Source of the DNA: Ranitomeya imitator
Lineage: Eukaryota
Assembly (NCBI RefSeq): GCF_032444005.1
Contig: NC_091291.1
Coordinates: 120,652,001 to 120,716,000, forward strand
Direction of reading: 5' to 3'
Length of the DNA stretch: 64,000 nt
The notes under the pieces are model-generated. The model was not told where the DNA came from, ran no database searches, and worked only from the letters and a program-made list of their open reading frames with translations. A program made the position numbers and the translations under genes. Below, in pieces: positions 10,101-64,000 of this stretch (the stretch's first letter is position 1; each line of letters opens with the position of its first letter).

Positions 10101-10235
10101 GTACAGGTGGCCCAAAGTATTAATGCATCTCAATAGAGGGATAAGAGAAGTTCTGAGACCATTTTTTTTCTTTGCAGTGTGTTTTGTCTCTCTTTTCCCC
10201 TTTACCTCTGGGTGGTTCAGGATACAGGTGTAAAC

Positions 10236-34720: not shown

Positions 34721-34776
34721 TAGGGATTTTTGTGTACTCACCGTAAAATCCTTTTCTCCGAGCCACTCATTGGGGA
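34721..34776 (-). mobile_element. Isolated DIRS 3'-terminal tip remnant
   Basis: GGGATTTTTGTGTACTCACCGTAAAATCCTTTTCTCCGAGCCACTCATTGGGG resembles the termini at 28321 and 60992. Confidence 0.65.
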
Positions 34777-34829
34777 AAGTGAAAGTTTAGTTACTCTTTT
34801 AAAATAATTAACCGGGTGCAGCTCCTTAC

Positions 34830-34966
34830 CAGCCAGGATTACTAAATCCGCCTCCTTAAGAGCATCCCTTCGATTCTGACGTATATGTATGGGGCTGTCT
34901 CTTCCCAGCATGCCTCTAGCCATTCCACCCAAGAAAGACGGGATACCCAAAGTTTCCAAGGCCTTC
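34830..34966 (-). CDS. ILVBL: ILVBL coding exon 8
   Basis: [46 protein letters not shown]|GTAAG; 137 bp. Confidence 0.95.
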
Positions 34967-35043
34967 CTGAAGGACGAGAAAAACTGGATTTTTTTCTTCT
35001 TTTTTCGACACCAGCCTTATAGTAGGGCACTAAGGTGTAGTAC

Positions 35044-40016: not shown

Positions 40017-40601
40017 TTAGCCATTCATGTCCCTCCACACCTTCAAGCTTAATTCAATGCCACTACGGATAGCCAAACACCACATATCATTACCCACCGC
40101 GTTCAGGTGCACGCCATCAGCTCTCCAGTAAGCTCCTTGACCCGATTCCAAGTCCACATGTCTCACGGCCAACGCGCCATTCCTCACCATAAACCGAGAT
40201 ATGGCCCTGTTTATTTTAATCCGGGCCCTGTTCACCCCCTCGTGTGATCTAGCACCTCTCCATCTTTTACGGGGAATGATGTCGGACCACACCAACAACA
40301 CTTTTGGAAACATGACCCAGAACCTCAGGATATCGAATTTGATATCCTCAATCAGCTCCCTACAAGACCGTTTAGCCAAATCATTCCCCCCTGAATGTAT
40401 CACCACGATCTCCGGCACTCTATCCAGTCTAACAAAACGATGAAATTCAGGTAACCATTCCTTCCACACCATCCCCCTTTTACCGATCCATCGTAAAGTC
40501 ACTGTCTCTCGAGAAAGACCCAACTGACGACCGTCCGGACGAACCGCAGCACGCAACGCAGCCCATACAACATACGAATGCCCCATGATCCAGACGAGCA
40601 T
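40017..40601 (-). CDS. SGNH/GDSL-family hydrolase (esterase) of the Ngaro-like element, intact
   Basis: Block I GHSY, block II G, block III GGND, block V DGVH; 194 aa with no stops. Confidence 0.88.
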   Translation of the reverse strand: MLVWIMGHSYVVWAALRAAVRPDGRQLGLSRETVTLRWIGKRGMVWKEWLPEFHRFVRLDRVPEIVVIHSGGNDLAKRSCRELIEDIKFDILRFWVMFPKVLLVWSDIIPRKRWRGARSHEGVNRARIKINRAISRFMVRNGALAVRHVDLESGQGAYWRADGVHLNAVGNDMWCLAIRSGIELSLKVWRDMNG

Positions 40602-41079
40602 CGGATCAGGCCCTGCAACACAGAAAGAAAGGCAACAAACAATTAACTTAACACAGCTTCTAACTCACAATAGGTTTGGGCGAACATACGACTGGAATCT
40701 TGAAGATTCCCACCTCCCAATTCTCCGAACCACATCCTCGCCAAGGCCCCACCTAGCGGCCTCAGTCGCTGCCCCGATCCTGAAGGAGTGACCACTATAT
40801 TGTGTTGCAGGTAAGCCCGCTGCCGCCAAACATTTCCTAAAAACAGAAATGAACTGAAAACGGGACAAGAAAGACCCATTTTCGTGCACCAAGAATGGCT
40901 CGTCTAACACCCCGCCTTTTGCCATGTACTTCTTCACGGATGCCACCGGGCACACCGGGGATCCTTCAACATTGAACAACACCACTTTGCACCCTTTCCC
41001 ATACACGTCCGTTTTGGAAGCCTTAATAAACACTACCACCTTATTCCCTTCGACATCCACGTTTTCTCTTAACAAAATA

Positions 41080-43353
41080 CCGTATATACTCGAGTATAAG
41101 CCGACCCGAGTATAAGCCGACCCCCCTAATTTTGCCACAAAAAACTGGGAAAACTTATTGACTCGAGTATAAGCCTAGGGTGGAAATGCAGCATTTACCG
41201 GTGAATTTCAAAAATAAAAATAGATCATTATTTCCCCATAGCTGTGCCATATAGTGCTCTGCACCGTTCATATTTCCCCATAGGTGTGAACCATATAGTG
41301 CTCTGCACCGTTCATTGTGCCCCCTAGCTGTGCCATATACGGTGCTCTGCACCGTTCATTGTGCCCCATAGATGTGCCATATACGGTGCTCTGCACCGTT
41401 CACTGTGCCCCATAGCTGTGCCATATACGGTGCTCTGCACCGTTCACTGTGCCCCATAGCTGTGCTGTGCCATATACGGTGCTCTGCACCGTTCACTGTG
41501 CCCCATAGCTGTGCCATATACGGTGCTCTGCACCGTTCACTGTGCCCCATAGCTGTGCTGTGCCATATACGGTGCTCTGCACCGTTCACTGTGCCCCATA
41601 CATAGCTGTGCTGTGCCATATACGGTGCTCTGCACCGTTCACTGTGCCCTATAGCTGTGCTGTGCCATATACGGTGCTCTGCACCGTTCACTGTGCCCCA
41701 TAGCTGTGCTGTGCCATATACGGTGCTCTGCACCGTTCACTGTGCCCCATAGCTGTGCTGTGCCATATACGGTGCTCTGCACCGTTCACTGCGCCCCATA
41801 GCTGCGCTGTGCCATATACGGTGCTCTGCACCGTTCACTGTGCCCCATAGCTGTGCTGTGCCATATACGGTGCTCTGCACCGTTCACTGTGCCCCATACA
41901 TAGCTGTGCTGTGCCATATACGGTGCTCTGCACCGTTCACTGTGCCCTATAGCTGTGCTGTGCCATATACGGTGCTCTGCACCGTTCACTGTGCCCCATA
42001 GCTGTGCTGTGCCATATACGGTGCTCTGCACCGTTCACTGTGCCCCATAGCTGTGCTGTGCCATATACGGTGCTCTGCACCGTTCACTGCGCCCCATAGC
42101 TGCGCTGTGCCATATACGGTGCTCTGCACCGTTCACTGCGCCCCATAGCTGCGCTGTGCCATATACGGTGCTCTGCACCGTTCACTGTGCCCCATAGCTG
42201 TGCTGTGCCATATACGGTGCTCTGCACCGTTCACTGTGCCCCATAGCTGTGCTGTGCCATATACGGTGCTCTGCACCGTTCACTGTGCCCCATAGCTGTG
42301 CTGTGCCATATACGGTGCTCTGCACCGTTCACTGTGCCCCATAGCTGTGCTGTGCCATATACGGTGCTCTGCACCGTTCACTGTGCCCCATACATAGCTG
42401 TGCTGTGCCATATACGGTGCTCTGCACCGTTCACTGTGCCCTATAGCTGTGCTGTGCCATATACGGTGCTCTGCACCGTTCACTGTGCCCCATAGCTGTG
42501 CTGTGCCATATACGGTGCTCTGCACCGTTCACTGTGCCCCATAGCTGTGCTGTGCCATATACGGTGCTCTGCACCGTTCACTGTGCCCCATAGCTGTGCT
42601 GTGCCATATACGGTGCTCTGCACCGTTCACTGTGCCCCATAGCTGTGCTGTGCCATATACGGTGCTCTGCACCGTTCACTGTGCCCCATAGATGTTCCAC
42701 ATAAATTTGTGCCGCCGCTGCCGCAATAAAGAAAAAAAAACACATACTCGCCTCCCTTGATTGCAGCTCCCGGCGTCTCGTTCCGGCGCCTCCATCTTCC
42801 CGGCGTCTCTGCTCTGACTGATCAGGCAGAGGGCGCCGCGCACACTGTATGCGTCATCGCGCCCTCTGCCTGAACAGTCAGAGAGCAGAGACGCCGGGAA
42901 GATGGAGGCGCCGGCCGGGAAGATGGATCGGCGCCCGGCGGCTGGAACGAGGACAGGTGAATATGCGATACTTACCTAGTCCTGGCGATCCTCGCGCTGT
43001 CCCTCTGCCTGGTCTTCGGTGCCGCAGCTTCTTTCTCTATCAGCGGTCACCGGCACCGCTGATTAGAGAAATGAATAAGCGGCTCCGCCCCTATGGGAGG
43101 TGGAGCCGCTTATTCATTTCTGTAATGAGCGGTCCCACGTGACCGCTGAAGAGAGGAAGAAACTGCAGCGCCGAAGCCCGTGGGACGGCAGGGACAGCGC
43201 GAGGATCGCTGGGACTAGGTAAGTATACCTCAGCGCCCTCACCCCCTCACCCGCCGACCCCACCGCTACCGTGACTCGAGTATAAGCCGAGGGGGGCACT
43301 TTCAGCCCAAAAATTTGGGCTGAAAATCTCGGCTTATACTCGAGTATATACGG
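41080..43353. mobile_element. Tc2/pogo-like non-autonomous TA-target element inserted in the YR gene
   Basis: TIR CCGTATATACTCGAGTATAAGCCGA at both ends; TA TSD at 41078-79 and 43354-55. Confidence 0.9.
41240..42700. repeat. Minisatellite, ~49-bp unit (44/49/53-bp variants), about 30 copies
   Basis: CTGTGCCATATACGGTGCTCTGCACCGTTCACTGTGCCCCATAGCTGTG repeated head-to-tail with no spacers. Confidence 0.95.
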
Positions 43354-43813
43354 TACCTTTTTTACTAACGGACGGGCTAACCAACTCACCTAACCGAAAT
43401 GCCCCAAAGAAGGCCAAAGAAAAGGCTGCACAGAACAGAACCACTTCCCATTCGGAAAAACACACCTCTTGCAACTTCCGCTCAATGGCTGAGAGCACCT
43501 CATAAGATACGGGTCGGCGACCGTCCGAAGCCTTCCAGCCTTTCTTCCAACCCCGAACAACTTGCTGAACCAAGAAGGATTTCGTTATATCCTTACCCCC
43601 CCTCCATTTAAAGGTTGAAGGCTAGCCCCGCCAGAAACTTATTCAAACGTGTCACTGACCAACCTGCCTCCCAATGATGACCTAAGAATAACAACAAACC
43701 ATACTCCTCCTCCATATCCTGGTCCATACTTGACATCCAGGATTCCCACAAGCTCCAAGCCTGATTATAATGAGACCAAGATGAATCCGCGAGCGATTTG
43801 GTAAATAACTCTG

Positions 43814-45400
43814 TTACGGCCCTCGCGGCAGGTTCCACAACTCCACTGGACAATCCCGGCCCGCGCTCTCCGCCTGTGGTGCCAAATCCCGGAAAAGCTG
43901 CCACTGAAATTGAGAAAGAGCAACAACTATTAGATCAGGCGCTGACAAGCTAACTTCAGATACAATCCATAAGTTAAACTTAAGACCCAGGAAAACCAAG
44001 TGCTGCAAGACCTTCACTACTGCAGGCGTAGCCGCTGACAACGAGTTTACCGCCGTCACCGTTCCAACATGCTCACAATGAAAAGAAATCTTCAAATTCC
44101 TCAATTTGTCACCCCACAGGGCCAACGCAACTACCCTGGGGAACAAATGCAACAGTAGCCGGTTGTTTGTTAACCCCTCCTCCTTCCATTCTTCCGGCCA
44201 AGCCGCTGCTGACCAGCTACCATGAAAGAAAAGACCAAAGCCACTCATTTCAACGACATGCACCAAAATGCCCAAGGAGGTAGCATCTGCCACCGGCTGA
44301 ATCCACAGAGATCTGCCATTGTACTCGTCCAGAAAATCCGCCCACATCTTCAAATCGTCCCGAAACTCTTTCTTTATCCTGATGAAATGCAAAGGGGACT
44401 TTACCCCTACTGTTGCCAAGGATAGGCGGCGGCAGAACGCTCGACCCATCGGCATGATCCTACATGCAAAGTTCAGTTTCCCTAACAACGATTGCAAACT
44501 GCGCAAATTTATCTTCTTCAAACCAATCGTATTAACCACATCTTGGCGCAACGCGGTAACCTTGTCTGCAGGTAGCCTACATTCCATTGCTACCGTGTCG
44601 ATTTCAATGCCTAGGAAGCTCAACACTGTCACCGGACCAACTGTTTTATCCTCCGCCAAAGGCACCCCGAAGTTTTTTGTCACACTCTCCATTGTATGCA
44701 ACAAAATCGAACAATCTGCTGATTCCGCTGGCCCTATAAACAGAAAGTCATCCAGATAGTGCGAACATGAGCGTATCCCAGACACATCTTTCACCACCCA
44801 TTCTAGGAACGTGCTGAAGGCCTCAAAGTAAGCACATGAAATCGAGCAACCCATGGGAAGACAACGATCAACAAAGAAGCCGCCATCCCAAAAACAACCC
44901 AATAAATGCAAACTGTCAGGATGAACTGGCAACAAACGAAAGGCCGCTTCGATGTCGGTCTTAGCCAGCTTAGCCCCCTTTCCACATGCTCTAACCCACT
45001 CCATCGCTGAATCGAATGATAAGTACGACACCGAACTCAACTCGGGATCAATACCATCATTAACCGAAGATCCCTTCGGAAATGACAGGTGATGGATTAA
45101 CCTAAATTTATTAGGTTCTTTCTTAGGGACCACGCCAAGAGGTGACACCCTCAGATTTGCAATCGGAGGGGCGACAAACGGGCCTGCCATTCTTCCCAGA
45201 GCAACTTCCTTATTCAACTTCTCCGACACGACCTCCGGGAATTGTAACGCCGATTTCAAATTTTTTCTTTTTAAACTAACATCCTGCTCAACATAAGGGA
45301 TTTTGAAACCCTCCTTAAAACCGTCGCGCAATAAAACTGCAGCTGACCTATCAGGGTATCTACTTAGAAAGGCCTCCATCACGACCCACTGCACCGGAGT
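43814..45400 (-). CDS. Reverse transcriptase-RNase H of the Ngaro-like element (open frame 45535-43814)
   Basis: SPLGVVPKK..FRLIHHLS, KTDIEAAFR, LPMGCSISC, HYLDDFLF; RNase H-like C-terminus overlapping the YR start. Confidence 0.9.
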   Translation of the reverse strand, partial: TPVQWVVMEAFLSRYPDRSAAVLLRDGFKEGFKIPYVEQDVSLKRKNLKSALQFPEVVSEKLNKEVALGRMAGPFVAPPIANLRVSPLGVVPKKEPNKFRLIHHLSFPKGSSVNDGIDPELSSVSYLSFDSAMEWVRACGKGAKLAKTDIEAAFRLLPVHPDSLHLLGCFWDGGFFVDRCLPMGCSISCAYFEAFSTFLEWVVKDVSGIRSCSHYLDDFLFIGPAESADCSILLHTMESVTKNFGVPLAEDKTVGPVTVLSFLGIEIDTVAMECRLPADKVTALRQDVVNTIGLKKINLRSLQSLLGKLNFACRIMPMGRAFCRRLSLATVGVKSPLHFIRIKKEFRDDLKMWADFLDEYNGRSLWIQPVADATSLGILVHVVEMSGFGLFFHGSWSAAAWPEEWKEEGLTNNRLLLHLFPRVVALALWGDKLRNLKISFHCEHVGTVTAVNSLSAATPAVVKVLQHLVFLGLKFNLWIVSEVSLSAPDLIVVALSQFQWQLFRDLAPQAESAGRDCPVELWNLPRGP

Positions 45401-47480
45401 CACCCCTTTTGTCAGCTGAATCTCCAACTTTTTGCCTGTTACCCCTGAAACATTTTGAAGCGCTATGCACCCCCCCGCAGGTTGAACACTCGTGCCTATA
45501 TTTACACTTGCTCCCGAATCTGCATATGCCATCATTGAAGGCGAAACACAGTCCCTTCTGCAAAGCCGCCGAGTGTCCTGACTGCCCTGAACTCCCGGCG
45601 CCCCCGTGAAAAGGCTGGCTAGTCTGACCTAAACGGGACGGGACCATAACTCTCATCCACAACGCTATGTCCTTGTGATCCCACCTGATACTTGGCCTAA
45701 AAGCCTTACGCTGACGAAACTGTTCGTCATAGCGTAACCAACCCTGTCCCCCATAGGTCCTGTAAGCCTCCCCTATGGCATCTAAGTAACAAAATAATGC
45801 CGAGCAATTTTCCGGGGCCTTCTCCCCGATTACGCTAGCCATAATAGCGAAAGCTTGCAGCCAATTTGAAAATGATCTGGGAATCAGCCTATATCTCCGT
45901 TTCTCCTCATCTTCTTTTTTAGAGTCCTCCCTTCTAGGTCTATCCAAATTAAATCTCTCTAGGGGTAAAAGAGAAAATATTTCTATGTACTCCCCTTTCC
46001 AGATTTTTTCCCTAACCTCTTGTTTTAAATGTGCCCCTAACGGGCCCTCGAAGCAGACATAGACCTCCCCCCTAGCCGCATCGTCTAGTTGCGGTACATC
46101 CTCCTTTTCCTTATCCTGCAAAGCTCCCTCACCTGGTGCATCAATTCCTGACCCAGGCCCTGGTGCTGTTCCGTCCTTCTCCCTTGATGAGCTCCCCGTG
46201 TCTGCCGCAGGACCCGCACTGCTGGATGTACCCGTAACTTCAGACAACTGTCTAGACCCCTCAAACGACCCCGTATTTCCCAACCAAGCAGCTGACGGCA
46301 AAGACCCCCTGCTAAGACCGGACCCCCACAAGCCCGCTAGCTCCCCTAAACCTCTAAGGATTAAACCCATACCCCCGCTAGCAACTCCCGAAGTAATGTC
46401 ACTATTCCTAGCTTCAGGGGAAACTATGCCTGGCAAATTAAAGATAGGGAAAATGTTCTCACCTAGCTGCCTGGGTGCTGTGAGCCCAGCAGCCGAAGAT
46501 CCAGCTCCCAGCCGAAGGTGTCCTGCATCCCAACCGGCTTGATCCGCGATGTTGCCCGCCGAACTCCTGGCGGCCGTATCCGTGTCCTGGCGACTCGGTG
46601 ATGCCGTCGACTGCCCTGGTGCTGCGGAAAGGGAAAAGGCCGAGCCAGCATCCTGCCGCCCGATGGAAGATGTGCGGCTCCTTGCCACGGATACGTCCCC
46701 GGCACTGCGTACCGAAGCGACGGAATGTCGCCTGCCGGAATCCGGAAAATTTCCGCCACCACCAGCAGAGGACGCAGATCCAGGAAAGTTCCGGCCATCA
46801 CCAGCAGAGGGCGCAGATCCAGGAAAATCCCGGCCATCACCAGCAGAGGGCGCAGCTGCAGGAAAATCCCGGCCAACACCAGCAGAGGGCGCAGAACTTG
46901 CAATATCCAGGCCACCACCAGCAGAGGGCGCTGCTGCGTTGAAGACTCCAGAGCTGTGCACTGCAGAAGGCCGCACGCTGATGCCAGGGCCAGCCGACTG
47001 CCGCCCGCATAATCCTCGGCGCTGAGGGGCCACCGCACCTGACCCCCGTCTCCTCGGCTGTCGCTGCCTCCCACGCTGAGCGGCGCCAGCGGGCATGCTG
47101 GCGGCCGCCGTACCGGCTCCTGCTCCTGCCGCCCCACGTCGCCCGGACACTGAAGGAGGGGAGGAAGGATCCACCCCCCGTTGTAGGCCCCGCCGCACTG
47201 GAGGATTCCTCCCGGCGCCGCGCTGTGAGGTGGAGGGAACAGCGCTGCTTACCGGAGGGTCCGCAGAGGGGCTCCTATTTCGGCGCCGGGCCCTGGGGAT
47301 GATGTCCGGGCTTAGGCGCGCCGGAGGCCTAGTCCTCCGCGGCCGGCGCCCGTCCTGCGGTGCCTGCGATGGTGCTCCCGATGTCCCCTGGAGAAGGCTG
47401 TTAACGGATGCATTCAGCCAATCTGTCCCCTGGGAGCTGGCTGCCGTCCGGAGACGCTGGAGGATCGCTTCAACGTCCAT
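45360..47480 (-). CDS. ORF1 (Gag-like) of the Ngaro-like element, 706 aa, intact
   Basis: Low-complexity N-half with 13-aa repeats; C-terminal WLRYDEQFR and CFAFNDGICRFGSKCKYRH-ECSTCGGVHSASKC zinc-finger-like motifs. Confidence 0.85.
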   Translation of the reverse strand: MDVEAILQRLRTAASSQGTDWLNASVNSLLQGTSGAPSQAPQDGRRPRRTRPPARLSPDIIPRARRRNRSPSADPPVSSAVPSTSQRGAGRNPPVRRGLQRGVDPSSPPSVSGRRGAAGAGAGTAAASMPAGAAQRGRQRQPRRRGSGAVAPQRRGLCGRQSAGPGISVRPSAVHSSGVFNAAAPSAGGGLDIASSAPSAGVGRDFPAAAPSAGDGRDFPGSAPSAGDGRNFPGSASSAGGGGNFPDSGRRHSVASVRSAGDVSVARSRTSSIGRQDAGSAFSLSAAPGQSTASPSRQDTDTAARSSAGNIADQAGWDAGHLRLGAGSSAAGLTAPRQLGENIFPIFNLPGIVSPEARNSDITSGVASGGMGLILRGLGELAGLWGSGLSRGSLPSAAWLGNTGSFEGSRQLSEVTGTSSSAGPAADTGSSSREKDGTAPGPGSGIDAPGEGALQDKEKEDVPQLDDAARGEVYVCFEGPLGAHLKQEVREKIWKGEYIEIFSLLPLERFNLDRPRREDSKKEDEEKRRYRLIPRSFSNWLQAFAIMASVIGEKAPENCSALFCYLDAIGEAYRTYGGQGWLRYDEQFRQRKAFRPSIRWDHKDIALWMRVMVPSRLGQTSQPFHGGAGSSGQSGHSAALQKGLCFAFNDGICRFGSKCKYRHECSTCGGVHSASKCFRGNRQKVGDSADKRGDSGAVGRDGGLSK

Positions 47481-48170
47481 TCTGGTAAGTGTGACAGAGA
47501 TTCCTCACTTGTCACGCAGGCACCTAAAATGGATGCCTGCGTGAGGAGCGTGCCCCTTTTTATGTGCCCCCTCCCCACAGTCCCCTAGTTCCACCCCTTA
47601 TTTTCAAAAAATGCCCCTAAAGCCACCCCTCAAGTTCCCAGTTAACCCCTTACCACCGTATCCCTTCTAACTGCTCCAGCTCCCCAGGTCCCACGTAACC
47701 CCGTCATGGCGGCCTCCCTTTACGTGCCGTGGGCCCCCAGTACGGCCTTTCTGGATAATGTGCTGCCGAGAATGCTGATTTTCTTTTTCTTAAAAATAAT
47801 TCCAGCCAACGTCCATACATTCCAATCATTCATCTGGTGATCAGCAGCCTGTTTAATGTGTCCGATAGTCAGGAACAACTTAAGCTCGTTTTAAGATTAT
47901 TGTTTCATCTAAATAGGCCATAAGTCTGAAGACAGAAGCATCTTTCCAAACCATCGACACACGTGACCCCATGATGCTACACAGAACAGGGATTGCAACT
48001 CATCCCTCCCAAAGTAATACCACACATAGCCTGAAGACAGGTGAGGCACTGTTTCAGGAAGAAAGCAAAGATTTGTCTAAACACAGATGGAAGATGGAAG
48101 GAGAGGTATGTTATACAGAGTCATCACTCTTATTATTTTATATCCACATTAATAATGGAGATTTTCCTAC

Positions 48171-50215: not shown

Positions 50216-50574
50216 AAGAAGAACCCAAGACCATGCATTAGGTGGAGCTATCTTCAATCTTTTTATTGTTATTTTTTGGGGGGGCATGAATTTATGGTTT
50301 CGCCAGTCTAAAATGGCAGCAGGAGCATCGACAGTTTATCTAACCCACCTCTCTATGAAATAATCACATACGTCCAGCTGCAGGAATGGTAGAGCAGGAA
50401 TCATGCAAGTCTTTAGCGAGAGTGGATTTATTAGACATTAAATACCTGATGGTGGAGCTCGTTTGCCCGGTTAGGCTATAAATATGGTTAGATATTTTGT
50501 AATGTGTATTAAAGCGAGAAAATATTCCAGTTGTGGATTCATATTGTGTAATGCAAAGTTTTCATACGATTTAC

Positions 50575-50691
50575 CTTATGAAAGAGCTGATAGAGGACAC
50601 CCAGACGGCGCCCCAACCACAGCAGTACAATGGACACTAATGCTCCAAGGGCTGCACCCACAAGGTATATGCACTCACAACCGTGATCCAT
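50575..50691 (-). CDS. ILVBL: ILVBL coding exon 1 (ATG; N-terminal hydrophobic anchor)
   Basis: Acceptor CTCAG| at 50700; MDHGCECIYLVGAALGALVSIVLLWLGRRLGVLYQLFHK|GTAAA, homologous to human RLGLFYQLLHK; summed CDS is 1881 nt = 626 aa + stop. Confidence 0.92.
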
Positions 50692-56853: not shown

Positions 56854-57310
56854 CAATGGGTGGGGTTTGTGATGCGCTTCCGGCATGAGCATGTTAAAGC
56901 CCACACTCACCTCCCGTGCTAGAGCGGTTCCGGCGGTGTTGGCACTCACGGTCTCGGGGCCAAAATGCAGTGAAATGACACGTAAAACCCGGCGCCCAAT
57001 CAGCGCTGGTGTCACTGACTCAGTCTTCGGACAAACTAAACATGAAGAGGAAGTCCAGGCTGCAGCTGATCCCTGGCTTCCTCTTCATGTTCAGCTCATT
57101 GCTCAAGGCAAAGGCCGAAAGTGAGTGACGCCAGCACTCACTGGGCGCTGGTGTCACGTGTCGCAAGACCGCATCACAGCCCCGGAGAGAGCGAGTGCTG
57201 ATACTGCATGAACGAAGCCATCATGAGAGGCAAGTTTAGGCTTTATTACTTTATCGGGGCCAGACATTTAGTTTAAGAAGGGGTTGTCCTAGTAGTGGAC
57301 AACCCATTAA

Positions 57311-58148
57311 AGGGAACCTGTCACCCTGTTTTTTCAAGACGAGCTAAAAATAGCGTTAAATAGGGGCAGAGCTGTGCTTTACATTAGTGTATTTTGGAGC
57401 CTTTATTCCCCACCTATGCTGCCGAAATACCTTTGTAAAGTTGCCGTTTTGGGCTGTCACTCACGCTGGTCAGGTCATATGGGCGTGGTGACAGCGCTGT
57501 TTCTCCCCCAGATCTCCGTTGTGGCGTAGTGGTGTGCGCATGTCCAAGTGGCGAATCCACTGCGCAGCTTCAAGGAAAATAGCGCGATCTGCGCTATTCA
57601 GCCGTTTATCGGTGGGCGCGGCCATCTTTGTGAGGCCGCGCGTGCGCAGATGGTTCTTGTCGGCTTCCCGAGGCTTCAGGAAAATGGCCACGGGATGCCG
57701 CGCGTGCGCAGATGGAGATCGCGGCGGCCATTTTCCTGCAGTCGAGATGCGAACGCGCGGCATCCCGCGGCCATTTTCCTGAAGCCCCGGGAAGCCGAGA
57801 AGAACCATCTGCGAATGCGCGGCCTCACGAAGATGGCCGTGCCCACCGATAAACGGCTGAATAGCGCAGATCGCGCTATTTTCCTTGAAGCTGCGGAGTG
57901 GATTTACCACTTGGACATGCGCACACCACTACGCCACCAACGGAGATCTGGGGGAGAAACAGTGCTGTCACCACGCCCATATGACCTGACCAGCGTGAGT
58001 GACAGCCCAAAACGGCGACTTTACAAAGGTATTTCGGCAGCATAGGTGGGGAATAAAGGCTCCAAAATACACTAATGTAAAGCCCAGCTCTGCCCCTATT
58101 TAACGCTATTTTTAGCTCTTCTTGAAAAAACGGGGTGACAGGTTCCCT
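57311..58148. mobile_element. 838-bp near-perfect palindromic T2/Kolobok-type MITE
   Basis: TTAA|AGGGAACCTGTCACCC...GGGTGACAGGTTCCCT|TTAA; arms complementary over ~400 bp. Confidence 0.92.
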
Positions 58149-59191
58149 TTAAGTGGCGCTGTCAGAGACTGATAGTGGCATTTAACATGTTAACAGCCGC
58201 GGGTGGATCACGATTCCACCTGTGGCTGTTAGGGACATATGGCAGCTGATCAAATCAGCTGTCATGTGCGTGAAAAGATGCGGGTTTAGCGATGGAGCAT
58301 GCATCAAATTCCGGGACACGACTTATGACATAGCAATACGTGATAGGTCAAGAAGGGACCCTCCTGATTGGGTACACCTTGTCGCGGTGGGATGGCGTTA
58401 ATGCTTTGTTTGATCAAAATAGTTTTAATTAAGTACAATATGTTATTTACATGTACTACTATTATTTACTTACTACAGAGTATATGCTCATTTTGTTATT
58501 TTTCGGGTTTTATTTCCAAGCATTTCTGAAGCTATTTTTCTAAAGCATGTTTTTTTAGCCGGACCCCTTCCAAAAAACCTTGTGTGTACAGGGGCCCCCT
58601 GACTCCACCAACAGCTGATATTGGGAGAAAAAAAACGATCAGACATATTGAATTTCATTACGAGCTCATTTTAGCCTTTGAACCTTTTCACATATCTCTC
58701 TTTGTTTACAGAACGATGGTCCAGGAACGATGGTCCCCCAAAAAAAAAAAAAAAAAAAATGTCTGAGCTCGGTCCAATTTGTTGGTCTGCTAAAAATGAC
58801 AGACAGCACATCTATGCTGCCTAATGCAAGAGGACGGCGTGGGATCACATATGGATGGTACAATCGGACCAAAAACAAATTAAGACTAGTTCCAGCTCAG
58901 TAAGTCTGTCCACCTTTTGCATGAGAAAAAAAAAAAAACAACAAAAAACCGATGTATGAATTTGGCCATAATCAAGTTCGTGAGAATTAACTCCTCTTTC
59001 CAGAATAATCTTCTGAATTGATTTGCTTGTAAAGCGCTGCGGAATACGTTGGCGCTATATAAATAAAATTATTATTATTATTATCATCCGCTATCTTACA
59101 ATACAGTTATCGACTGAATGAAAATTGTTGTAAACGCATTTAATTCATATAAAAATGTGCAAAGGTATCCAAAAAATAAAACACAACTGTA

Positions 59192-59387
59192 TCAGATATG
59201 ATCCAATGCCATTATCGCAGCGGCGTAGTCGTACATCTTTCTGTAGCCAACATTTAACTCTTCAGGGTACGGTAAGAATTCTTGTACATGTTTGACCACG
59301 CACGCGGGGATCAGCTTGTACTTGCGAAAGTTCAGAAAGCCGTGGGCCCAGACTACAAAGGTTCTATAGGACGTCCGCCTTAGCTTG
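59192..59387 (-). CDS. Last exon of a stand-alone P2X7-ballast/KolX-like protein
   Basis: TTGCAG|C AAG: (H)KLRRTSYRTFVVWAHGFLNFRKYKLIPACVVKHVQEFLPYPEELNVGY..*, resembling P2X7 LRHCAYRCYATW...LPSCCRWRIRKEFP...YSGF. Confidence 0.8.
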
Positions 59388-59536
59388 CTGCAAGAAAGCA
59401 AAAAAAATAATAAAAAGACAGATTAGAAACTAAACTTTCAACACTAAAGGAATAAGTAATGGTTTTTTAACCTCTTTTATGGACCAACATTGGTTAACCG
59501 TTTGGCCTTTTATTCAATTGTATAGGTAAAATCCGG

Positions 59537-59690
59537 NNNNNNNNNNNNNNNNNNNNNNNNNNNNNNNNNNNNNNNNNNNNNNNNNNNNNNNNNNNNNNNN
59601 NNNNNNNNNNNNNNNNNNNNNNNNNNNNNNNNNNNNNNNNNNNNNNNNNNNNNNNNNNNNNNNNNNNNNNNNNNNNNNNNNNNNNNNNNN
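59537..59690. other. Assembly gap (N run)
   Basis: 154 Ns, inside the intron of the ballast-like gene. Confidence 1.
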
Positions 59691-60041
59691 CAGACTATAG
59701 GCATTACAGATGAAAAATCGTCTTTATTTTTTTCTGGTCAAAAACCAAGCTATTTTGCATTCTCTGGATCTGGCCTAAAGCTCACGACATGCTATGCAAT
59801 ATTCCACCGTAGATAGGCTAATAACTTTCTTAAATAATTGTTGCATACTCTTAAGCTGTTAGAAGTATTTAGTTTGTATTGGTTTTGTGCTTTTTATTTT
59901 AAAGCAAAAGAAGTATGAGTTAATTTACTAATGGCAAGTAAAGACCTCGAAAATTAAGGAATTTACACATAAGTGTGTCACAAAACTAGAATTAAATATT
60001 GCAGCAAAAACCTATATGGCGATAACGTAACTAATACTTAC

Positions 60042-60397
60042 TGAAGATAATACAGAACATCATTTTTTCTCTTAATTTTGCCTAAGAAACGATAAAGGAA
60101 ATCAAGACGGTCCTTGTCTAAACACATCTCCTGAAAGGATGGATGCTTCGTGATACACAGGCGCTCTTTGTTAAGCTGCGGGAGAAGTACGGAAATCTCG
60201 TGGCAACATATGGACTCTTCCAAGGTAGACATGACGCAGCAGTGGCCACATTTACACCAACTGGTGTTTCTTATATCACGTCTGATATCCGGGATTGCGG
60301 GAAGTTCTTCCTTTACTCCTTGATGGTTTGTAGGATCGAACATAAAATTGGCCTGTGCTTGAGATGGTTTTTCCATGCCTTCCAGGACCCGGATACG
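60042..60397 (-). CDS. Middle exon of the P2X7-ballast/KolX-like protein (Cys-rich Zn-binding region)
   Basis: TTCACAG|CGT...WCKCGHCCVMSTLEESICCHEI...CITKHPSFQEMCLD...YYL CA|GTAAGT; 356 bp, phase 0 to 2. Confidence 0.85.
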
Positions 60398-60858
60398 CTG
60401 TGAAAAAATAAAAATTTGAATATATAACTCTATATACGGAGTGGTTTTTTTTTCTGCACCAAAACCAAGAATAGTGGCAAGAAGAACTTGGCTCAGGTTC
60501 ATTTTAATGAGTGAAAAGCACTGCAAAAAAAAACAAAAAAAAAAAACATTGAAAGGATTAATATACTGCATCTTGGCAAAAACGTAGCAGGAATCAAAAT
60601 ACGGGGGAGGATAAAAAAAAAAAAAACTGTGTGCATGAGATTTCAGAAATCATCTAATTAATTTTTAATTAGTGGGGGTCTGTCACCCACCACCCCCATT
60701 ACATTGCAGTGTGTCCTACTAATCATCAGAGGCACTGGGGATGCTGGCGGGTAGTAGGAGGTTCACCGGGCTCTGGTCTGGGGGCCACATACTACCACCG
60801 TGGCTTCTGGACCAGGGTCCTGCAAATCTTATACAGCTATTTCCAAACTTTCACCTAC

Positions 60859-60939
60859 CCTGGCTTCTCTTTCTCGTAAACTCAGAATATCACCATGAAC
60901 TTGTGGACCAAATTTCCTCTTCTTTGCTTCCGTTTCCAG
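60859..60939 (-). CDS. Upstream internal exon of the P2X7-ballast/KolX-like gene (5' part lies beyond the DIRS, outside the window)
   Basis: CCTTTTTAG|CTG: LETEAKKRKFGPQVHGDILSLREREAR|GTAGGT; 81 bp, phase 0-0, in frame with the next exon. Confidence 0.6.
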
Positions 60940-60986
60940 CTAAAAAGGGTAAAAGAAAAAGTTTAACAAACTTAAGTTAAAAAGAA

Positions 60987-63900
60987 AAACAGGATTTTTG
61001 GTTGCTTACCGTAAAATCTGTTTCTCGGAGCCTTCATTGGGGGACACAGGAACCATGGGTGTATGCTGCTGCCACTAGGAGGCTGACACTATGCAAATAA
61101 AAAAGTTAGCTCCTCCTCTGCAGTGTACACCCCACCGACAGGAAGTAGGATCTTCAGTTAGTGAGAAAGCAGTAGGAGAAGCAACGTGTAAAAGAGAAGG
61201 ATAATATAATAATAATAAACCTTATATAGCGCCAACAAAATCCATGGCGCTTCACAGATTAACAGCTTCAAACACTCAGAGTGTTCAAAGAACTCAAACG
61301 TAGACAGTAAACAGAGCTGTTCAACTTGGGAGGGTGCTGTGTCCCCCAATGAAGGCTCCGAGAAACAGATTTTACGGTAAGCAACCAAAAATCCTGTTTT
61401 CTCTATCGCCTTTCATTGGGGGACACAGGAACCATGGGACGTCCCAAAGCAGTCCCTGGGGTGGGAAAAAACAGACTTCCATCAGGCCAGAGGACTCACC
61501 ACTGCCGCCTGCAGGATCCTTCTGCCCAGGCTGGAGTCCGCCGTAGTTCGGCAAAACCTGTGGATGGAAGACCAGGTTGCCGCTTTGCAAAGCCGTCGGC
61601 GAAAGCCCTGTGACGTACCGCACTGGAAGCGCCGACTGCCCGGGTAGAGTGAGCCTTCATCTCAGGAGGGGGCCCTCTGTGCTTGACCCGGTAAGCTTCC
61701 AAAATTGCCATTCTGATCGAGTGAGCAATCGTCGCCTTGGAAGCCGGCAGGCCTCTACGCACGCCATCAGGGATGGCGAAAAGAGAATCCATCTTTTGGA
61801 AAGCGGCCGTGCTAGCCAGGGAGATCCTCACTGCCCTGACGAGGTCCAGCCTGTTCAACGATCGCTCCAGAGGATGAGTCGGAGCTGGACAAAAGGAAGG
61901 TAGAACGAAGTCCTCGTTGAGGTGGAAAGATGAAAACCACCTCGAGAAAGGAGGAAGGCGGAGGCCTGGGACCACCTTATCCTGGTGGAAAAATCAAGAA
62001 AGGAGGACGGCAGGAAATGGCCGTCAACTCAAAAACGCGGCGGATCGAAGAGATGGACCTGAGAAAAGCCACCTTCCGAGATAGAACTGACAGGGAAAAC
62101 TCCCTGAGAGGCTCAAAGGGGGGAACCCCTAAGAACAACCAACACAACCTTTAAATCCCATGAATCCACAGAGGCCCTGAACGGAGGGACAGCGTGGACT
62201 ACTCCTTGAAGGAAAGTCTTAACCTGTGGCTGAGGAGATAAAGTCTTCTTAAAGGGAAGAAGAGCGGAGGAACCTGGCCCTTTTGAGAACTGAGAGCGAA
62301 GCCCGAATCCAGTCCTGCCTGAAGGAAAACCAAATGGAAGGCAGGGAAAAGGGACATAGGTGAAAAGCGGTTGGACTCGCATCAGCGAAAGTAAGCCTTC
62401 CAGGTACAATAGTAGATCCTGGAAGAAGACGAAGGCTTCCTAGCCTGGATTATAGTGTGACTCATCCGGGCCGAAAGGCCGGACACTCTTAAAAACAGTG
62501 GAGTCCACATCCACGCCGTTAAACTGAGCGACCGATAATTCGGGTGGCAGATCGGACCCTGAGACAGCAGATCGGGTCTGTTTGGAAGGCACCAGGGGTG
62601 TCCGCGAGAAGATAGACGATGTCTGCAAACCAAGACCTCCAGGGTCAATCCGGGACGATCAGAATGACCGGCACCCATCCCGCCTTGATCTTTTTCGACA
62701 GCTTGGAAAGCAATGGAAGGGGTGGGAACCGATAGGGGAGCAGGAACTGCGACCAAGGAATGGCCAAAATGTCAACACCACTGTGAGGGGATCACGGGAC
62801 CCTGGGCCGACCCGAGGGACCTCCTGTTCAATCGGGACGCCATGAGGTCCACCTCTGGAGTCCCCCATCGAAGAGCAATCCGACGGGAAACCTCCTGAAG
62901 TACCATTCCCCTGCCGCGAGGCCCTCGAAGCCGAGGAAGTCGGCGGCCTAAATGTCCATGCCGGGGACATGCACTGCGGAGCTCACCAGGACCGTTGCCT
63001 CTGTCCAAAGGAGGATCCTGGAATCTCGGCCGAGGCCAGAGAACGCCGAGTCCACCCCTGGTGGTAGACGTATGCCACTGCTGTGTCATTGTCTGTCTGG
63101 GTTCGAATTGGCAGGCTGCTGAGAATCCTTACCCAGTGAAGGCAAGACGGAAAGATGATCCGGAACTCGAGAACATTGATCGGCAAAGAGGACTCCTGCG
63201 CCGACCAACAACCCTGAAATAACAGGAGACAAAGCCCCGCGCCTCCGCCGAGCGGGCTGGCGCCCGTCGTCACCACCTGCCAGGGAACTGGAAGGAAGGA
63301 TATGCTGAGAAGGATCTACTCTGGGATAAGAGAAGTGACCTCGGCCACCAGTCGAGGAACCATTTGACCCGGGAGAAAACCGGATCGGACGATGCAGGGA
63401 GAAGACAGACCTGTCCCCTGTGATAGAATAGCCTGCTGAAGAAGTCTTGAATGAAACGGGCGAAGGGAAAATTGCTTCCGATGTTGCAACCAACCTCCTT
63501 AGGGCCTTTAAGGCCCATCGGAAAGGAGGGGAGCCGAGAACCCTGGAGCAAGTGAACTTCCTGACAAAGGAGGGATATCTTGTCTTCGGGAAGGAAGACT
63601 CTGGTCCGACAAGTGTTGAAGAACATGCCCGGAGATACGAGGCGCTGAACAAGACGGAACTTCTTCCTGTTGACGAGCCACCCGCAACAGTTAGAATGTC
63701 GGGAAAGATGGATAGACTTTCGGGAGCCTGAAACCGAAATTCCTGAGCCTCCATGGAAGCGATTACTGAACGAGGGGATATCGTCCTGAAGTGTCTCCGA
63801 CGAAACTTCTTGTTCAGCAAATTGAGATCTTGACTGGGACGACCCTTGTCGTTCTCTGTCAGTACAAAAAGATTCGAAGAGAAGCCTGTGAACCGTTCCT

Positions 63901-64000
63901 GTTCTGGGACGGGAACGATTACTCCGGATTTAAGGAGGGAAACAATGGCAGTAAAGAAAAACCGGGACTAGAGCGGGGTCTCTCGTAGGTTGGGATTTGA
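60987..64000 (-). mobile_element. Second DIRS1-type element (3' part; runs off the window), heavily frameshifted
   Basis: Terminus nearly identical to 28321-28430; ICR 61341-61438; YR (MKAHSTRAVGAS) ~61500-62400, methyltransferase-like VDLMASR ~62850, RNase H (INVLE, QTDNDTAVAY) ~63000-63280, RT fragments to the end. Confidence 0.9.

What the first reader, a model, noticed from the sequence alone, without database searches (positions are those of the whole stretch)
59192..60939. Intact, spliced, stand-alone P2X7 'ballast'/KolX-like gene with no channel domain
Seen: three exons with canonical sites and matching phases give an uninterrupted ~210-aa frame containing WCKCGHC..EESICC..C and a LRRTSYR..W..IPAC..F motif block. 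Known: this matches the Zn/guanine-nucleotide-binding cytoplasmic ballast of P2X7, and similar domains occur in nanor-like proteins and the KolX accessory protein of Kolobok transposons. No P2X transmembrane or ectodomain sequence is present in these exons. Inference: either the accessory gene of a Kolobok element or a domesticated free ballast-domain gene of unknown function.
Basis: partly seen in the sequence, partly recalled or inferred. Interest (0 to 1): 0.7.

Follow-up and report, generated by a model that had tools for sequence, protein, structure and literature searches.

The report
Frog KRAB–ballast fusion gene, 3' half
These three exons are the expressed 3' half of an old, conserved frog gene that joins a KRAB repressor box to a transposon-derived "ballast" zinc domain like the tail of the P2X7 receptor; it is neither a stand-alone ballast gene nor a live transposon gene.

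Summary
On the minus strand, exons 60939-60859, 60397-60042 and 59387-59192 have canonical splice sites and give a 210-aa frame.

- **Domain:** the frame matches Pfam P2RX7_C. A family profile hits only P2X7 in the PDB (E 4.5e-18), and an AlphaFold model hits only P2X7 ballast structures.
- **Assembly gap:** it lies inside the intron between exons 2 and 3. Spliced contigs from three runs join the exons exactly as predicted, and nothing is missing.
- **Not stand-alone:** exon 1 opens at a splice acceptor, and the transcript contigs carry about 770-820 further 5' bases that lie outside the window.
- **Full gene:** the 210 aa equal the C-terminus of a Ranitomeya imitator RefSeq model. Orthologues of 410-490 aa in more than 10 frog species all read KRAB box, acidic linker, ballast domain.
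- **Host gene, not a Kolobok copy:** it sits just upstream of ILVBL in this window, in Nanorana and in Spea. Its three C-terminal exon boundaries are conserved, its tree follows the species tree, and dN/dS is 0.08-0.22.

I found no paper describing a KRAB-ballast fusion. The likely function, inferred only, is a nuclear KRAB adaptor whose zinc fingers were replaced by the ballast module. The scan had already noted a different ballast capture (KBTBD4) elsewhere in this genome.

The parts
60859..60939 (-). Exon E1 (81 nt, 27 aa, LETEAKKRKFGPQ...REREAR). An internal exon with an NLS-like KKRK and the start of a conserved helix.
   Evidence: AG acceptor at 60941-60940 and GTAGGT donor. RNA-like contigs align for exactly 81 nt on this side of the 60397|60859 joint and then leave the stretch. 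An 81-nt exon sits at the same place in Nanorana, E. coqui, R. variabilis, D. tinctorius and Anomaloglossus.
60398..60858 (-). Intron 1 (461 nt, GT..AG)
   Evidence: The joint 60397|60859 is present in runs X3, X4 and X19 and absent in DNA run X12.
60042..60397 (-). Exon E2 (356 nt). Disordered stretch, then the first half of the ballast domain with six of the seven Zn-ligand cysteines (WCKCGHC, ICC, LCIT).
   Evidence: Pfam P2RX7_C profile 53-127, E 4.5e-7. Covered by spliced contigs. Invariant W74, C75, C77, C80, C91, C92 and C108 in a 50-sequence alignment.
59388..60041 (-). Intron 2 (654 nt as written, GT..AG). It contains the assembly gap 59537-59690.
   Evidence: The joint 59387|60042 is present in three runs. 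Low-depth intronic contigs (depth 2 against 22 on exons) look like pre-mRNA. The orthologous intron is 570 nt in R. variabilis.
59192..59387 (-). Exon E3 coding part (64 codons plus 1 split codon plus TGA). Second half of the ballast domain (LRRTSYR helix, IPAC, C-terminal ...MALDHI).
   Evidence: Pfam P2RX7_C profile 144-189. R149, Y153, R154, P173 and C175 are invariant or nearly so. A 196-nt terminal coding exon is conserved in five neobatrachian orthologues: Nanorana, E. coqui, R. variabilis, D. tinctorius and Anomaloglossus (190 nt in Spea gene B).
59055..59191 (-). 3' UTR (at least to 59095, probably to about 59055, running into a common repeat)
   Evidence: Contigs X3 record 17 and X4 record 24 align down to 59095 and carry 40 more letters where the tool skipped repeats 59055-59094.
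60986..61400 (.). MITE-like insertion (69-nt inverted ends, 97%) in the intron just 5' of E1. DIRS-like repeat sequence follows to the window end. No upstream exon of the gene lies in 60940-64000.
   Evidence: Inverted repeat I3. Very high multi-copy contig depth. tblastn of the full RefSeq model and blastn of a relative's mRNA find only E1-E3 in the window.
50572..50691 (-). First ILVBL exon (synteny anchor). ILVBL runs 50691 -> 22037 on the same strand, 8.5 kb downstream of the gene's stop codon.
   Evidence: 15 colinear tblastx blocks against the Spea ILVBL gene. TPP_enzyme_M Pfam hit at 34741-35016.

Best explanation
The three exons are the last three coding exons of a single-copy, transcribed host gene of Ranitomeya imitator. 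Its roughly 414-aa product reads KRAB box (aa 6-47, encoded beyond the window's end), then an acidic, KxE-rich linker, then a KKRK nuclear-localisation-like motif and a conserved helix (E1), then a C-terminal ballast / Zn-coordinating cysteine domain (E2-E3). That last domain is the fold known from the P2X7 tail and from KolX proteins of Kolobok transposons.

Shown here: the exon structure, the splicing, the domain identity, orthology across frogs at the ILVBL locus, and purifying selection.

Inferred origin: a ballast cassette that already carried these two introns, probably from a DNA transposon, was captured by splicing from the KRAB and linker exons of a neighbouring KRAB-C2H2 gene. This happened before Pelobatoidea and Neobatrachia split.

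Inferred mechanism (about 0.35-0.4): the protein is nuclear. The KRAB end engages a co-repressor (TRIM28-type, if this divergent KRAB still binds it). The dinuclear-zinc ballast domain replaces the zinc-finger array as the partner- or target-recognition module. Possible partners are transposon-derived proteins or DNA, or another nuclear ligand.

The confidence figure given (0.85) is for the identity of the gene, not for the mechanism.
For: Structure and expression: (exons, phases, splice sites). (joints 59387|60042 and 60397|60859 in three runs, absent from a DNA run; contigs of 1538 and 1591 nt with 768 and 821 nt 5' of E1 that do not lie in 58001-64000).

Domain: (P2RX7_C, 58 bits against cut-off 23.5). 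(family profile against PDB: only P2X7, residues 466-593, E 4.5e-18). (AF2 pLDDT about 90 over residues 63-210; Foldseek top 14 hits all P2X7, prob 1.00; next hit E 3.3). (seven invariant Cys).

Fusion: (the 210 aa equal P0174 residues 718-927). (KRAB + P2RX7_C in orthologues of Ranitomeya, Dendrobates, Anomaloglossus, Rhinoderma, Bufo, Hyla, Eleutherodactylus, Leptodactylus, Engystomops, Lithobates, Pyxicephalus, Nanorana, Staurois). (a 1589-nt transcript contig of a relative holds one uninterrupted 451-aa KRAB-ballast ORF; its alignment to the window breaks exactly at the exon borders).

Host gene: (olfactory receptor > KRAB-ballast > ILVBL, all on one strand, in Nanorana and Spea; KRAB-ballast directly upstream of ILVBL here). 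(conserved exon sizes). (clade with SH-aLRT 98 whose branching follows frog phylogeny, one row per species). (dN/dS 0.08-0.22). (exons 1.9% against non-coding 5.1% divergence from R. variabilis, with no exonic indels).

KRAB: (aligns to the ZNF568 and ZNF93 KRAB A+B boxes). (54% identical over 89 aa to the KRAB and linker of the adjacent KRAB-C2H2 gene).
Against: - The KRAB exons of R. imitator itself were not read, because they lie beyond base 64000. The link rests on the RefSeq model, which is a read-through fusion of two genes, on contig lengths, and on orthologues.
- A shorter KRAB-less isoform cannot be excluded. The 250-aa, 233-aa and 261-aa models in R. imitator, Mixophyes and Mantella may be partial or may be real.
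- The runs are only guessed to be RNA.
- Mechanism: the KRAB box has IKE where canonical KRABs have the MLE motif, and NCBI names the relatives ZNF777/282/398-like. Old variant KRABs mostly do not recruit KAP1 (PMC6745500).
- Only one of five rat P2X7 GDP-contact positions is kept (R546 = R149). H547 is R, R574 is V, R578 is Q and K583 is Y, so GDP binding is doubtful.
- To my knowledge no binding partner is established for any KolX or stand-alone ballast protein; for the P2X7 ballast, GDP and Ca2+-calmodulin binding are reported (PMC9574498, title seen, paper not read).
- The transposon donor (Kolobok or piggyBac) is unresolved.
Confidence: 0.85

Rival explanations
1. It is the KolX accessory gene of a (possibly decayed) Kol0-lineage Kolobok DNA transposon copy, as in Kolobok-1_XT of Xenopus.
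For: KolX proteins adopt the ballast fold, and the Kol0 lineage that carries them is represented by Kolobok-1_XT (PMC9587614). The gene lies in a very transposon-rich region. A weak 51-nt inverted repeat (76%) brackets it at 59028-59078 and 61206-61256.
Against: - No transposase or THAP ORF and no convincing TIRs surround it.
- The bracketing repeat arms are pieces of abundant repeats, shown by extreme contig depth in bins 59001-59200 and 61201-61400. The 3' UTR also runs into one arm.
- The same locus next to ILVBL is occupied in Nanorana and Spea.
- The tree is species-tree-like with one copy per species.
- dN/dS is 0.08-0.22.
- It is spliced to upstream exons.
Confidence: 0.03
2. It is a stand-alone, nanor-like domesticated ballast gene. 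The KRAB exons belong to a separate upstream gene, and the KRAB-ballast models are read-through artefacts.
For: The R. imitator RefSeq model is demonstrably a read-through of two genes across a Tc1 fragment. Shorter KRAB-less models exist (P0173 250 aa, P0005 233 aa, P0164 261 aa). Rump et al. 2020 describe Xenopus ZCD proteins without other domains (PMC7016195).
Against: - E1 starts at an acceptor, and contigs continue about 770-820 nt further 5'. That matches 204 aa plus a 5' UTR.
- Transcript contigs of a relative carry KRAB and ballast in one uninterrupted 451-aa ORF. Eight full-length (450-451 aa) members of the nine-member cluster come from separate contigs.
- Thirteen NCBI-annotated proteins of 375-489 aa from twelve frog species share the architecture.
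- The KRAB-to-ballast linker is alignable along the whole length (47-67% identity, 98-100% coverage).
Confidence: 0.07
3. It is the C-terminal part of the true P2RX7 receptor gene.
For: The only solved structures that match are P2X7.
Against: - Identity to P2X7 is only about 18-24%.
- Orthologues and the identical RefSeq model have KRAB, not P2X, upstream.
- The transcript contig is too short to hold a roughly 390-aa channel part.
- The domain is split by an intron that all frog paralogues share. In P2RX7, by contrast, the Zn domain lies in the last exon (PMC7016195).
- The locus is the ILVBL flank.
Confidence: 0.01

Closest known systems
P2X7 cytoplasmic ballast domain (Pfam PF20478 P2RX7_C; the ZCD of Rump et al. 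2020; structures 6u9v, 9e3m)
   Same: Same fold and family: profile E 4.5e-18 to residues 466-593, and the Foldseek top hits are P2X7 only. All seven Zn-ligand cysteines are kept, as are R546, Y550, R551, P570 and C572 equivalents.
   Different: It is not attached to a P2X channel and has no C-cys anchor. Four of five GDP-contact residues are replaced. The domain is split by an intron. It is attached to a KRAB box and an NLS-like motif, which implies a nuclear rather than sub-membrane setting (inference).
KolX, the second protein of Kol0-lineage Kolobok transposons, and nanor, a proposed domesticated KolX (Kojima & Bao 2022, PMC9587614)
   Same: A ballast-fold protein module of transposon origin that has been recruited by hosts. 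Like nanor, this is a conserved host gene.
   Different: It is not inside a transposon and is not stand-alone: it is fused to KRAB. No KolX sequence was available here for a direct comparison, so descent from KolX rather than from piggyBac-borne ballast genes is not shown. One Spea paralogue carries a piggyBac-type zf-Tnp_2 finger directly before the ballast domain.
KRAB-transposase host-transposase fusion genes (Cosby et al., bioRxiv 10.1101/2020.05.07.082677)
   Same: A KRAB module from a host KZFP-type gene is spliced to transposon-derived exons and kept under purifying selection. The KRAB and linker are 54% identical to those of the adjacent KRAB-C2H2 gene.
   Different: The captured part is not a transposase DNA-binding domain but a ballast domain like the KolX accessory protein, with no known DNA binding. 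That paper's text mentions Kolobok only among the transposase superfamilies that contribute fusions.
BTB-BACK-ballast isoforms of KBTBD4 / 'kelch-like 2' in frogs (earlier scan note s1-279655; database models P0047, P0091, P0168)
   Same: The same kind of event in the same genome: ballast exons used as an alternative C-terminus of a host gene. The two C-terminal intron positions are shared with a paralogue from that clade (X. laevis P0189).
   Different: It is a different ballast clade, a different host domain (a CUL3 adaptor, not KRAB) and a different locus.

Membership tests
P2RX7_C / ballast (ZCD) domain family, PF20478 | Profile match above the curated cut-off | tested here: met
   E2 alone scores 30.4 bits and the whole frame within P0174 scores 58 bits, against a cut-off of 23.5. 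A profile of 50 relatives hits P2X7 chains at E 4.5e-18.
P2RX7_C / ballast (ZCD) domain family, PF20478 | Seven conserved cysteines of the dinuclear zinc site | tested here: met
   C75, C77, C80, C91, C92, C108 and C175 are invariant in 50 sequences and align to the P2X7 WCxCGxC, CC, C-ITT and PSC motifs. Metal binding itself was not tested.
P2RX7_C / ballast (ZCD) domain family, PF20478 | Ballast fold | tested here: met
   AF2 model with pLDDT about 90 over residues 63-210. Foldseek top 14 hits are all P2X7, prob 1.00, 132-150 aligned columns.
P2RX7_C / ballast (ZCD) domain family, PF20478 | Guanine-nucleotide site (rat R546, H547, R574, R578, K583) | tested here: not met
   Only the R546 equivalent (R149) is kept. 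The others are R150, V177, Q181 and Y186. Rump et al. note that most non-mammalian ZCDs also lack these residues. This is not a family-defining feature, but it bears on function.
P2X7 receptor (P2RX7 gene) | P2X ectodomain and two transmembrane helices upstream of the ballast | tested here: not met
   The identical RefSeq C-terminus and all orthologues have KRAB upstream. No P2X hit among the window ORFs scanned with Pfam. The transcript contig is too short.
KolX accessory gene of a Kol0 Kolobok transposon | Lies within an element with a DDD/E (THAP) transposase, RR..YY termini and TTAA duplication | tested here: not met
   No such ORF or ends surround 59192-60939. The flanks are unrelated repeats.
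KolX accessory gene of a Kol0 Kolobok transposon | Multi-copy, transposon-like distribution | tested here: not met
   One syntenic copy per species beside ILVBL, a species-tree-like clade, and dN/dS of 0.08-0.22.
KolX accessory gene of a Kol0 Kolobok transposon | Direct sequence kinship to Repbase KolX proteins | not testable with these tools
   No KolX sequence was available as a reference. Kinship is inferred from the paper's statement that KolX matches P2X7 residues 476-595.
nanor-like stand-alone ZCD proteins | ZCD plus a short N-terminal region only, with no other domain | tested here: not met
   KRAB box in the full-length product.
KRAB-containing host-transposon fusion genes | KRAB box and transposon-derived domain in one spliced mRNA | tested here: met
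   A single 451-aa ORF sits on a 1589-nt transcript contig of a relative.
KRAB-containing host-transposon fusion genes | Captured part is a transposase DNA-binding domain | tested here: not met
   The captured part is P2RX7_C, the fold of the KolX accessory protein, not a transposase domain. A zf-Tnp_2 finger occurs only in one Spea paralogue.
KRAB-containing host-transposon fusion genes | KRAB able to recruit TRIM28/KAP1 | not testable with these tools
   It aligns to the ZNF93 and ZNF568 KRAB A+B boxes but has IKE in place of MLE. Old variant KRABs mostly fail to bind KAP1 (PMC6745500).

The most novel reading that the evidence does not exclude
The ballast/KolX module is a portable nuclear recognition or sensing domain that frogs have repeatedly wired to chromatin and ubiquitin effectors. 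Examples are KRAB (here), SET, BTB-BACK/CUL3 adaptors, and THAP in other animals. On this reading, the KRAB-ballast gene next to ILVBL is an anuran-wide regulator older than the Pelobatoidea-Neobatrachia split, in which a dinuclear-zinc domain replaces the zinc-finger array. It could act as a repressor aimed at the transposon family that donated the domain, or as a ligand-gated co-repressor. That would give a new handle on what the enigmatic P2X7 ballast fold binds.
Probability: 0.25. Interest if true: 0.75.

Novelty: new variant of a known kind. Interest (0 to 1): 0.55.

Why it matters
The function of the ballast domain is an open question, both for P2X7 and for the KolX proteins of Kolobok transposons. 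A frog gene that has kept this domain fused to a KRAB box, under purifying selection, since before spadefoot toads and neobatrachian frogs split places the fold in a nuclear, transcription-linked setting. It also offers a soluble, tractable protein for binding and localisation studies.

It extends the catalogue of KRAB-transposon fusions from transposase DNA-binding domains to an accessory-protein domain. Together with the BTB, SET and THAP fusions, it suggests that the ballast cassette, which carries its own introns and splice sites, is a recurrent substrate for exon shuffling.

On the practical side, it shows that RefSeq XP_069599113.1 merges two genes, and that earlier descriptions of frog ZCD proteins as lacking other domains are incomplete.

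Tried and rejected
- **Word-index search with exon 2 alone:** it found nothing because its length filter (65-206 aa) excludes the real 410-450-aa proteins. The exhaustive search was therefore needed.
- **Failed look-ups:** exact look-ups for the Pyxicephalus protein, the probable Xenopus KRAB-ballast protein P0008 and the Rhinophrynus protein were not on record. Whether pipids have the ILVBL-linked orthologue stays open. X. laevis P0189 sits at another locus and in another clade.
- **Candidate TIRs:** the inverted repeat 59028-59078 / 61206-61256 was considered as transposon ends around the gene and rejected. It is 76% complementary, both arms are parts of very abundant repeats, and one arm lies within the 3' UTR region.
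- **Bacterial promoter/terminator scan:** irrelevant for a vertebrate gene.
- **Contig depth:** depth is about 13-16 over the gene and thousands over the flanking repeats in the DNA run. This is compatible with a single copy, but the tool says depth is not a copy number, so I did not use it as evidence.
- **dS:** it is saturated for the Nanorana and Spea comparisons. Only dendrobatoid and E. coqui pairs are quoted.
- **Same-genome fetch:** I did not fetch the R. imitator locus from another copy of this genome, to respect the rule on the N gap. The KRAB exons of this species were therefore not read directly.
Full report
**1. What is in the sequence**

The gene lies on the minus strand. There are three exons:
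- E1, 60939-60859 (81 nt)
- E2, 60397-60042 (356 nt)
- E3, 59387-59192 (196 nt, including TGA at 59194-59192)

Each exon has a polypyrimidine-AG acceptor, and E1 and E2 have GTAGGT and GTAAGT donors. E1 begins directly after an acceptor, so it is an internal exon.

**2. The assembly gap**

The N run 59537-59690 lies inside intron 2 (60041-59388) and touches no coding base. Four results show that nothing coding is hidden in it.
- Pfam P2RX7_C matches E2 up to profile position 127 and E3 from position 144. The 17 residues between the matches fit the 16 unmatched profile positions (128-143) between them.
- Contigs of three runs (X3, X4, X19) join 60042 directly to 59387.
- The orthologous intron of R. 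variabilis is 570 nt and holds no extra exon.
- The mRNA of a relative aligns to the window in three blocks that break exactly at the exon borders.

I neither filled the gap nor looked its letters up.

**3. Transcription and splicing**

I laid four runs on 58001-64000 (6000 letters).
- Three small runs, probably RNA, carry both predicted joints (59387|60042 and 60397|60859, CT..AC on the plus strand, which is GT..AG on the gene strand). Exon contigs have depth 17-48, and intron fragments have depth about 2.
- The DNA run of a sister species (X12) has neither joint, and its contigs run through the intron.
- The two spliced contigs are 1538 nt (X3) and 1591 nt (X4). On the E1 side of the joint they align for exactly 81 nt. 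They then have 768 and 821 further 5' letters that lie nowhere in 58001-64000.
- The message therefore continues into exons beyond the window end.
- The 3' UTR reaches at least 59095.
- The RNA contigs differ from the window at 60134 (synonymous, F115) and at 60312 (K56R, the allele of the older R. imitator protein CAJ0922146.1).

**4. Domain identity**

- E2 and E3 each hit Pfam P2RX7_C. The whole frame scores 58 bits against a cut-off of 23.5.
- A profile built from 50 relatives finds only P2X7 chains in the PDB (residues 466-593, E 4.5e-18).
- An AlphaFold2 model is confident (pLDDT about 90) from residue 63 to the end. It has one more helix at residues 21-34 and disordered stretches at 1-17 and 36-62.
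- Foldseek against the PDB returns 14 P2X7 structures (prob 1.00, 132-150 aligned columns). Nothing else scores below E 3.
- Seven cysteines are invariant in all 50 sequences (C75, C77, C80, C91, C92, C108, C175). They align to the zinc ligands of P2X7.
- Also conserved are R149 (rat R546), Y153, R154 and P173.
- Of the five rat GDP-contact residues listed by Rump et al., only R546 is kept. The other four positions hold R150, V177, Q181 and Y186. The position of R578 is R in Bufo, Spea and Pelobates but Q in this lineage.

**5. It is not stand-alone**

The exhaustive protein search with E2 gave best hits that are 350-880-aa proteins, in which E2 aligns about 160 to 700 residues from the start.
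- Pfam shows a KRAB box at residues 6-47 and P2RX7_C at the C-terminus.
- A second search lists KRAB + P2RX7_C proteins of 410-490 aa from Eleutherodactylus, Rhinoderma, Bufo, Anomaloglossus, Hyla, Ranitomeya, Leptodactylus, Engystomops, Lithobates, Pyxicephalus and Nanorana, a partial 391-aa model from Staurois, and two sets of transcript-derived proteins.
- The window's 210 aa are identical to residues 718-927 of XP_069599113.1 of Ranitomeya imitator, which names the species.
- That 927-aa model is a read-through. It strings together a KRAB-C2H2 gene, a Tc1 HTH_SB fragment and the KRAB-ballast gene.
- The real product is the last 414 aa. This matches the 414-aa R. variabilis protein, which is 98% identical over the 210 aa.
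- 204 aa upstream of E1 need 612 nt, which leaves 156-209 nt of 5' UTR in the contigs of section 3.
- In a related frog, a 1589-nt transcript contig holds one uninterrupted 451-aa ORF with both domains.
- No exon of the N-terminal half lies in the window. The stretch 5' of E1 is a MITE-like element (60986-61400) followed by DIRS-like repeats.

**6. A host gene, not a transposon copy**

- **Synteny:** ILVBL runs from 50691 to 22037 on the same strand, 8.5 kb downstream of the stop codon. In Nanorana parkeri the order is olfactory receptor, KRAB-ballast, ILVBL, all on one strand. In Spea bombifrons it is olfactory receptor, two tandem KRAB-ballast genes, ILVBL.
- **Exon structure:** it is conserved (E1 81 nt, E2 353-359 nt, E3 196 nt) in Nanorana, Eleutherodactylus, R. 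variabilis, Dendrobates and Anomaloglossus.
- **Phylogeny:** a maximum-likelihood tree of the C-terminal part puts all these proteins in one clade (SH-aLRT 98). Its order is P0008 (a KRAB-ballast protein of unrecorded species), then Pelobatoidea, then Neobatrachia. Ranoidea, Dendrobatoidea and Hylidae are recovered, with one row per species.
- **Selection:** pairwise dN/dS over the 210 codons is 0.08-0.17 within dendrobatoids and 0.15-0.22 against Eleutherodactylus (NG86). Against R. variabilis the exons differ at 1.9% with no indels. Aligned non-coding sequence differs at 5.1%, with 58 gap columns.
- **No transposon features:** there is no transposase ORF and there are no convincing terminal repeats around the gene.

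**7. Origin (inference)**

- The KRAB box and the following 45 residues are 54% identical to those of the adjacent KRAB-C2H2 gene. The same two genes are also merged in a Dendropsophus model. This points to a local KRAB donor.
- A ballast paralogue of another clade and locus (X. laevis P0189) has introns at the same two positions. The captured cassette therefore already had these introns and splice sites, as expected for a transposon gene recruited by splicing. This is the mechanism described for transposase capture.
- Kojima and Bao showed that KolX of Kol0 Kolobok elements has the ballast fold, that nanor is probably a domesticated KolX, and that a few piggyBac families carry a related ORF.
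- One Spea paralogue has a piggyBac-type zf-Tnp_2 finger just before the ballast domain. The donor family is therefore open.

**8. Likely function (inference)**

The product has these parts:
- a KRAB A+B box that aligns to ZNF568 and ZNF93 (the latter solved with TRIM28)
- an acidic linker
- a conserved KKRK/KRRK motif in E1
- a conserved helix
- a zinc-binding ballast domain

The simplest reading is a nuclear adaptor in which the ballast domain takes the place of the zinc-finger array as the recognition module of a KRAB protein. Three caveats apply.
- The KRAB has IKE instead of MLE, and NCBI names its relatives ZNF777/282/398-like. Old variant KRABs mostly do not recruit KAP1.
- GDP binding is doubtful (section 4).
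- To my knowledge no partner of any KolX or stand-alone ballast protein is established. For the P2X7 ballast itself, GDP and Ca2+-calmodulin binding are reported (PMC9574498, title seen, paper not read).

The same domain is also fused to SET (Hyla), BTB-BACK (KBTBD4 / 'kelch-like 2' models in Eleutherodactylus and Ranitomeya), THAP+SAP (a pipefish) and THAP (Ixodes). This favours a nuclear or protein-turnover role.

**9. Novelty**

These things are already known:
- stand-alone ZCD proteins, including three from Xenopus
- the link between KolX and the ballast fold
- KRAB-transposase fusions

The KRAB-ballast architecture exists in databases only as automatic annotation ('uncharacterized', 'KRAB domain-containing', 'ZNF777-like'). 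Full-text searches for KRAB with KolX, and for KRAB with P2X7 and ballast, found no paper on it. Rump et al. state that ZCD proteins lack other domains except in P2X7 and two tick proteins. It is therefore a new variant of a known kind: a host-transposon fusion gene built on an accessory-protein domain.

My searches met those models independently.

**10. Verdict**

It is a ballast homologue, it has no channel, and it is domesticated. It is not stand-alone, the gene is not complete in the window, and it is not a Kolobok copy.
- Confidence that this is the 3' half of a conserved KRAB-ballast host gene is about 0.85.
- Confidence in the repressor-adaptor mechanism is about 0.35-0.4.

Noticed in passing
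window 22037-50691 (minus strand): ILVBL gene: 15 colinear coding blocks match Spea ILVBL. The second assembly gap (37079-37210) lies in one of its introns.
   Followed up: partly
window 40020-47504 (minus strand): A tyrosine-recombinase retroelement (DIRS/Ngaro-like) sits inside an ILVBL intron. It has a CCCH gag-like ORF, a reverse transcriptase, a phage-integrase-type recombinase and a GDSL/SGNH hydrolase ORF.
   Followed up: partly
window 9465-14762: A Ty3/gypsy chromovirus (RT, RNase H, integrase, chromodomain) is flanked by twin LTR ORFs at 9465-9767 and 14490-14762. A Tc1-type DDE_3 remnant lies at 18472-19086.
   Followed up: partly
window 57307-58152: A nested palindrome (215-nt arms at 98%, inner 190-nt arms at 94%) has extreme contig depth in all runs laid. 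It looks like a very abundant foldback element 1 kb downstream of the gene's 3' UTR.
   Followed up: no
window 60986-61400, then to 64000: A MITE-like element with 69-nt inverted ends (97%) starts 46 nt 5' of the E1 acceptor. DIRS-like repeat ORFs follow. It pushes the preceding exon out of the window (that intron is only 1.9 kb in R. variabilis).
   Followed up: partly
P0174 = XP_069599113.1 (R. imitator), P0002 = XP_069802723.1 (Dendropsophus): These RefSeq models merge the upstream KRAB-C2H2 zinc-finger gene with the KRAB-ballast gene. In R. imitator the merge runs through a Tc1 HTH_SB fragment. They are annotation read-throughs.
   Followed up: yes
L003 3019-17057 (Spea bombifrons): Two tandem KRAB-ballast genes lie upstream of ILVBL. 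The second (542 aa) has a piggyBac-type zf-Tnp_2 cysteine-rich finger encoded by its own exon just before the ballast domain. This may be a clue to the donor transposon.
   Followed up: partly
P0066 (Hyla sarda), P0091 (E. coqui KBTBD4 isoform X2), P0047 (R. imitator 'kelch-like 2' X2), P0087 (pipefish), P0143 (Ixodes ricinus): The ballast domain is also fused to SET, BTB-BACK, THAP+SAP and THAP. It seems to be a recurrently shuffled module.
   Followed up: partly
L005 20542-22626 (Xenopus laevis P0189): A ballast paralogue at a different locus shares both C-terminal intron positions with the ILVBL-linked gene. The introns therefore predate the split of these paralogues.
   Followed up: partly
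P0169-P0171 (Rhinatrema bivittatum): Caecilian 'ZNF282-like' proteins combine a similar KRAB with Tc5/CENP-B-type transposase DNA-binding domains (precomputed Pfam).
   Followed up: no
window 60134 and 60312: The assembly differs from all contigs laid at 60134 (synonymous). It differs from the three RNA-like runs at 60312 (K56R, the allele of the older R. imitator annotation).
   Followed up: yes
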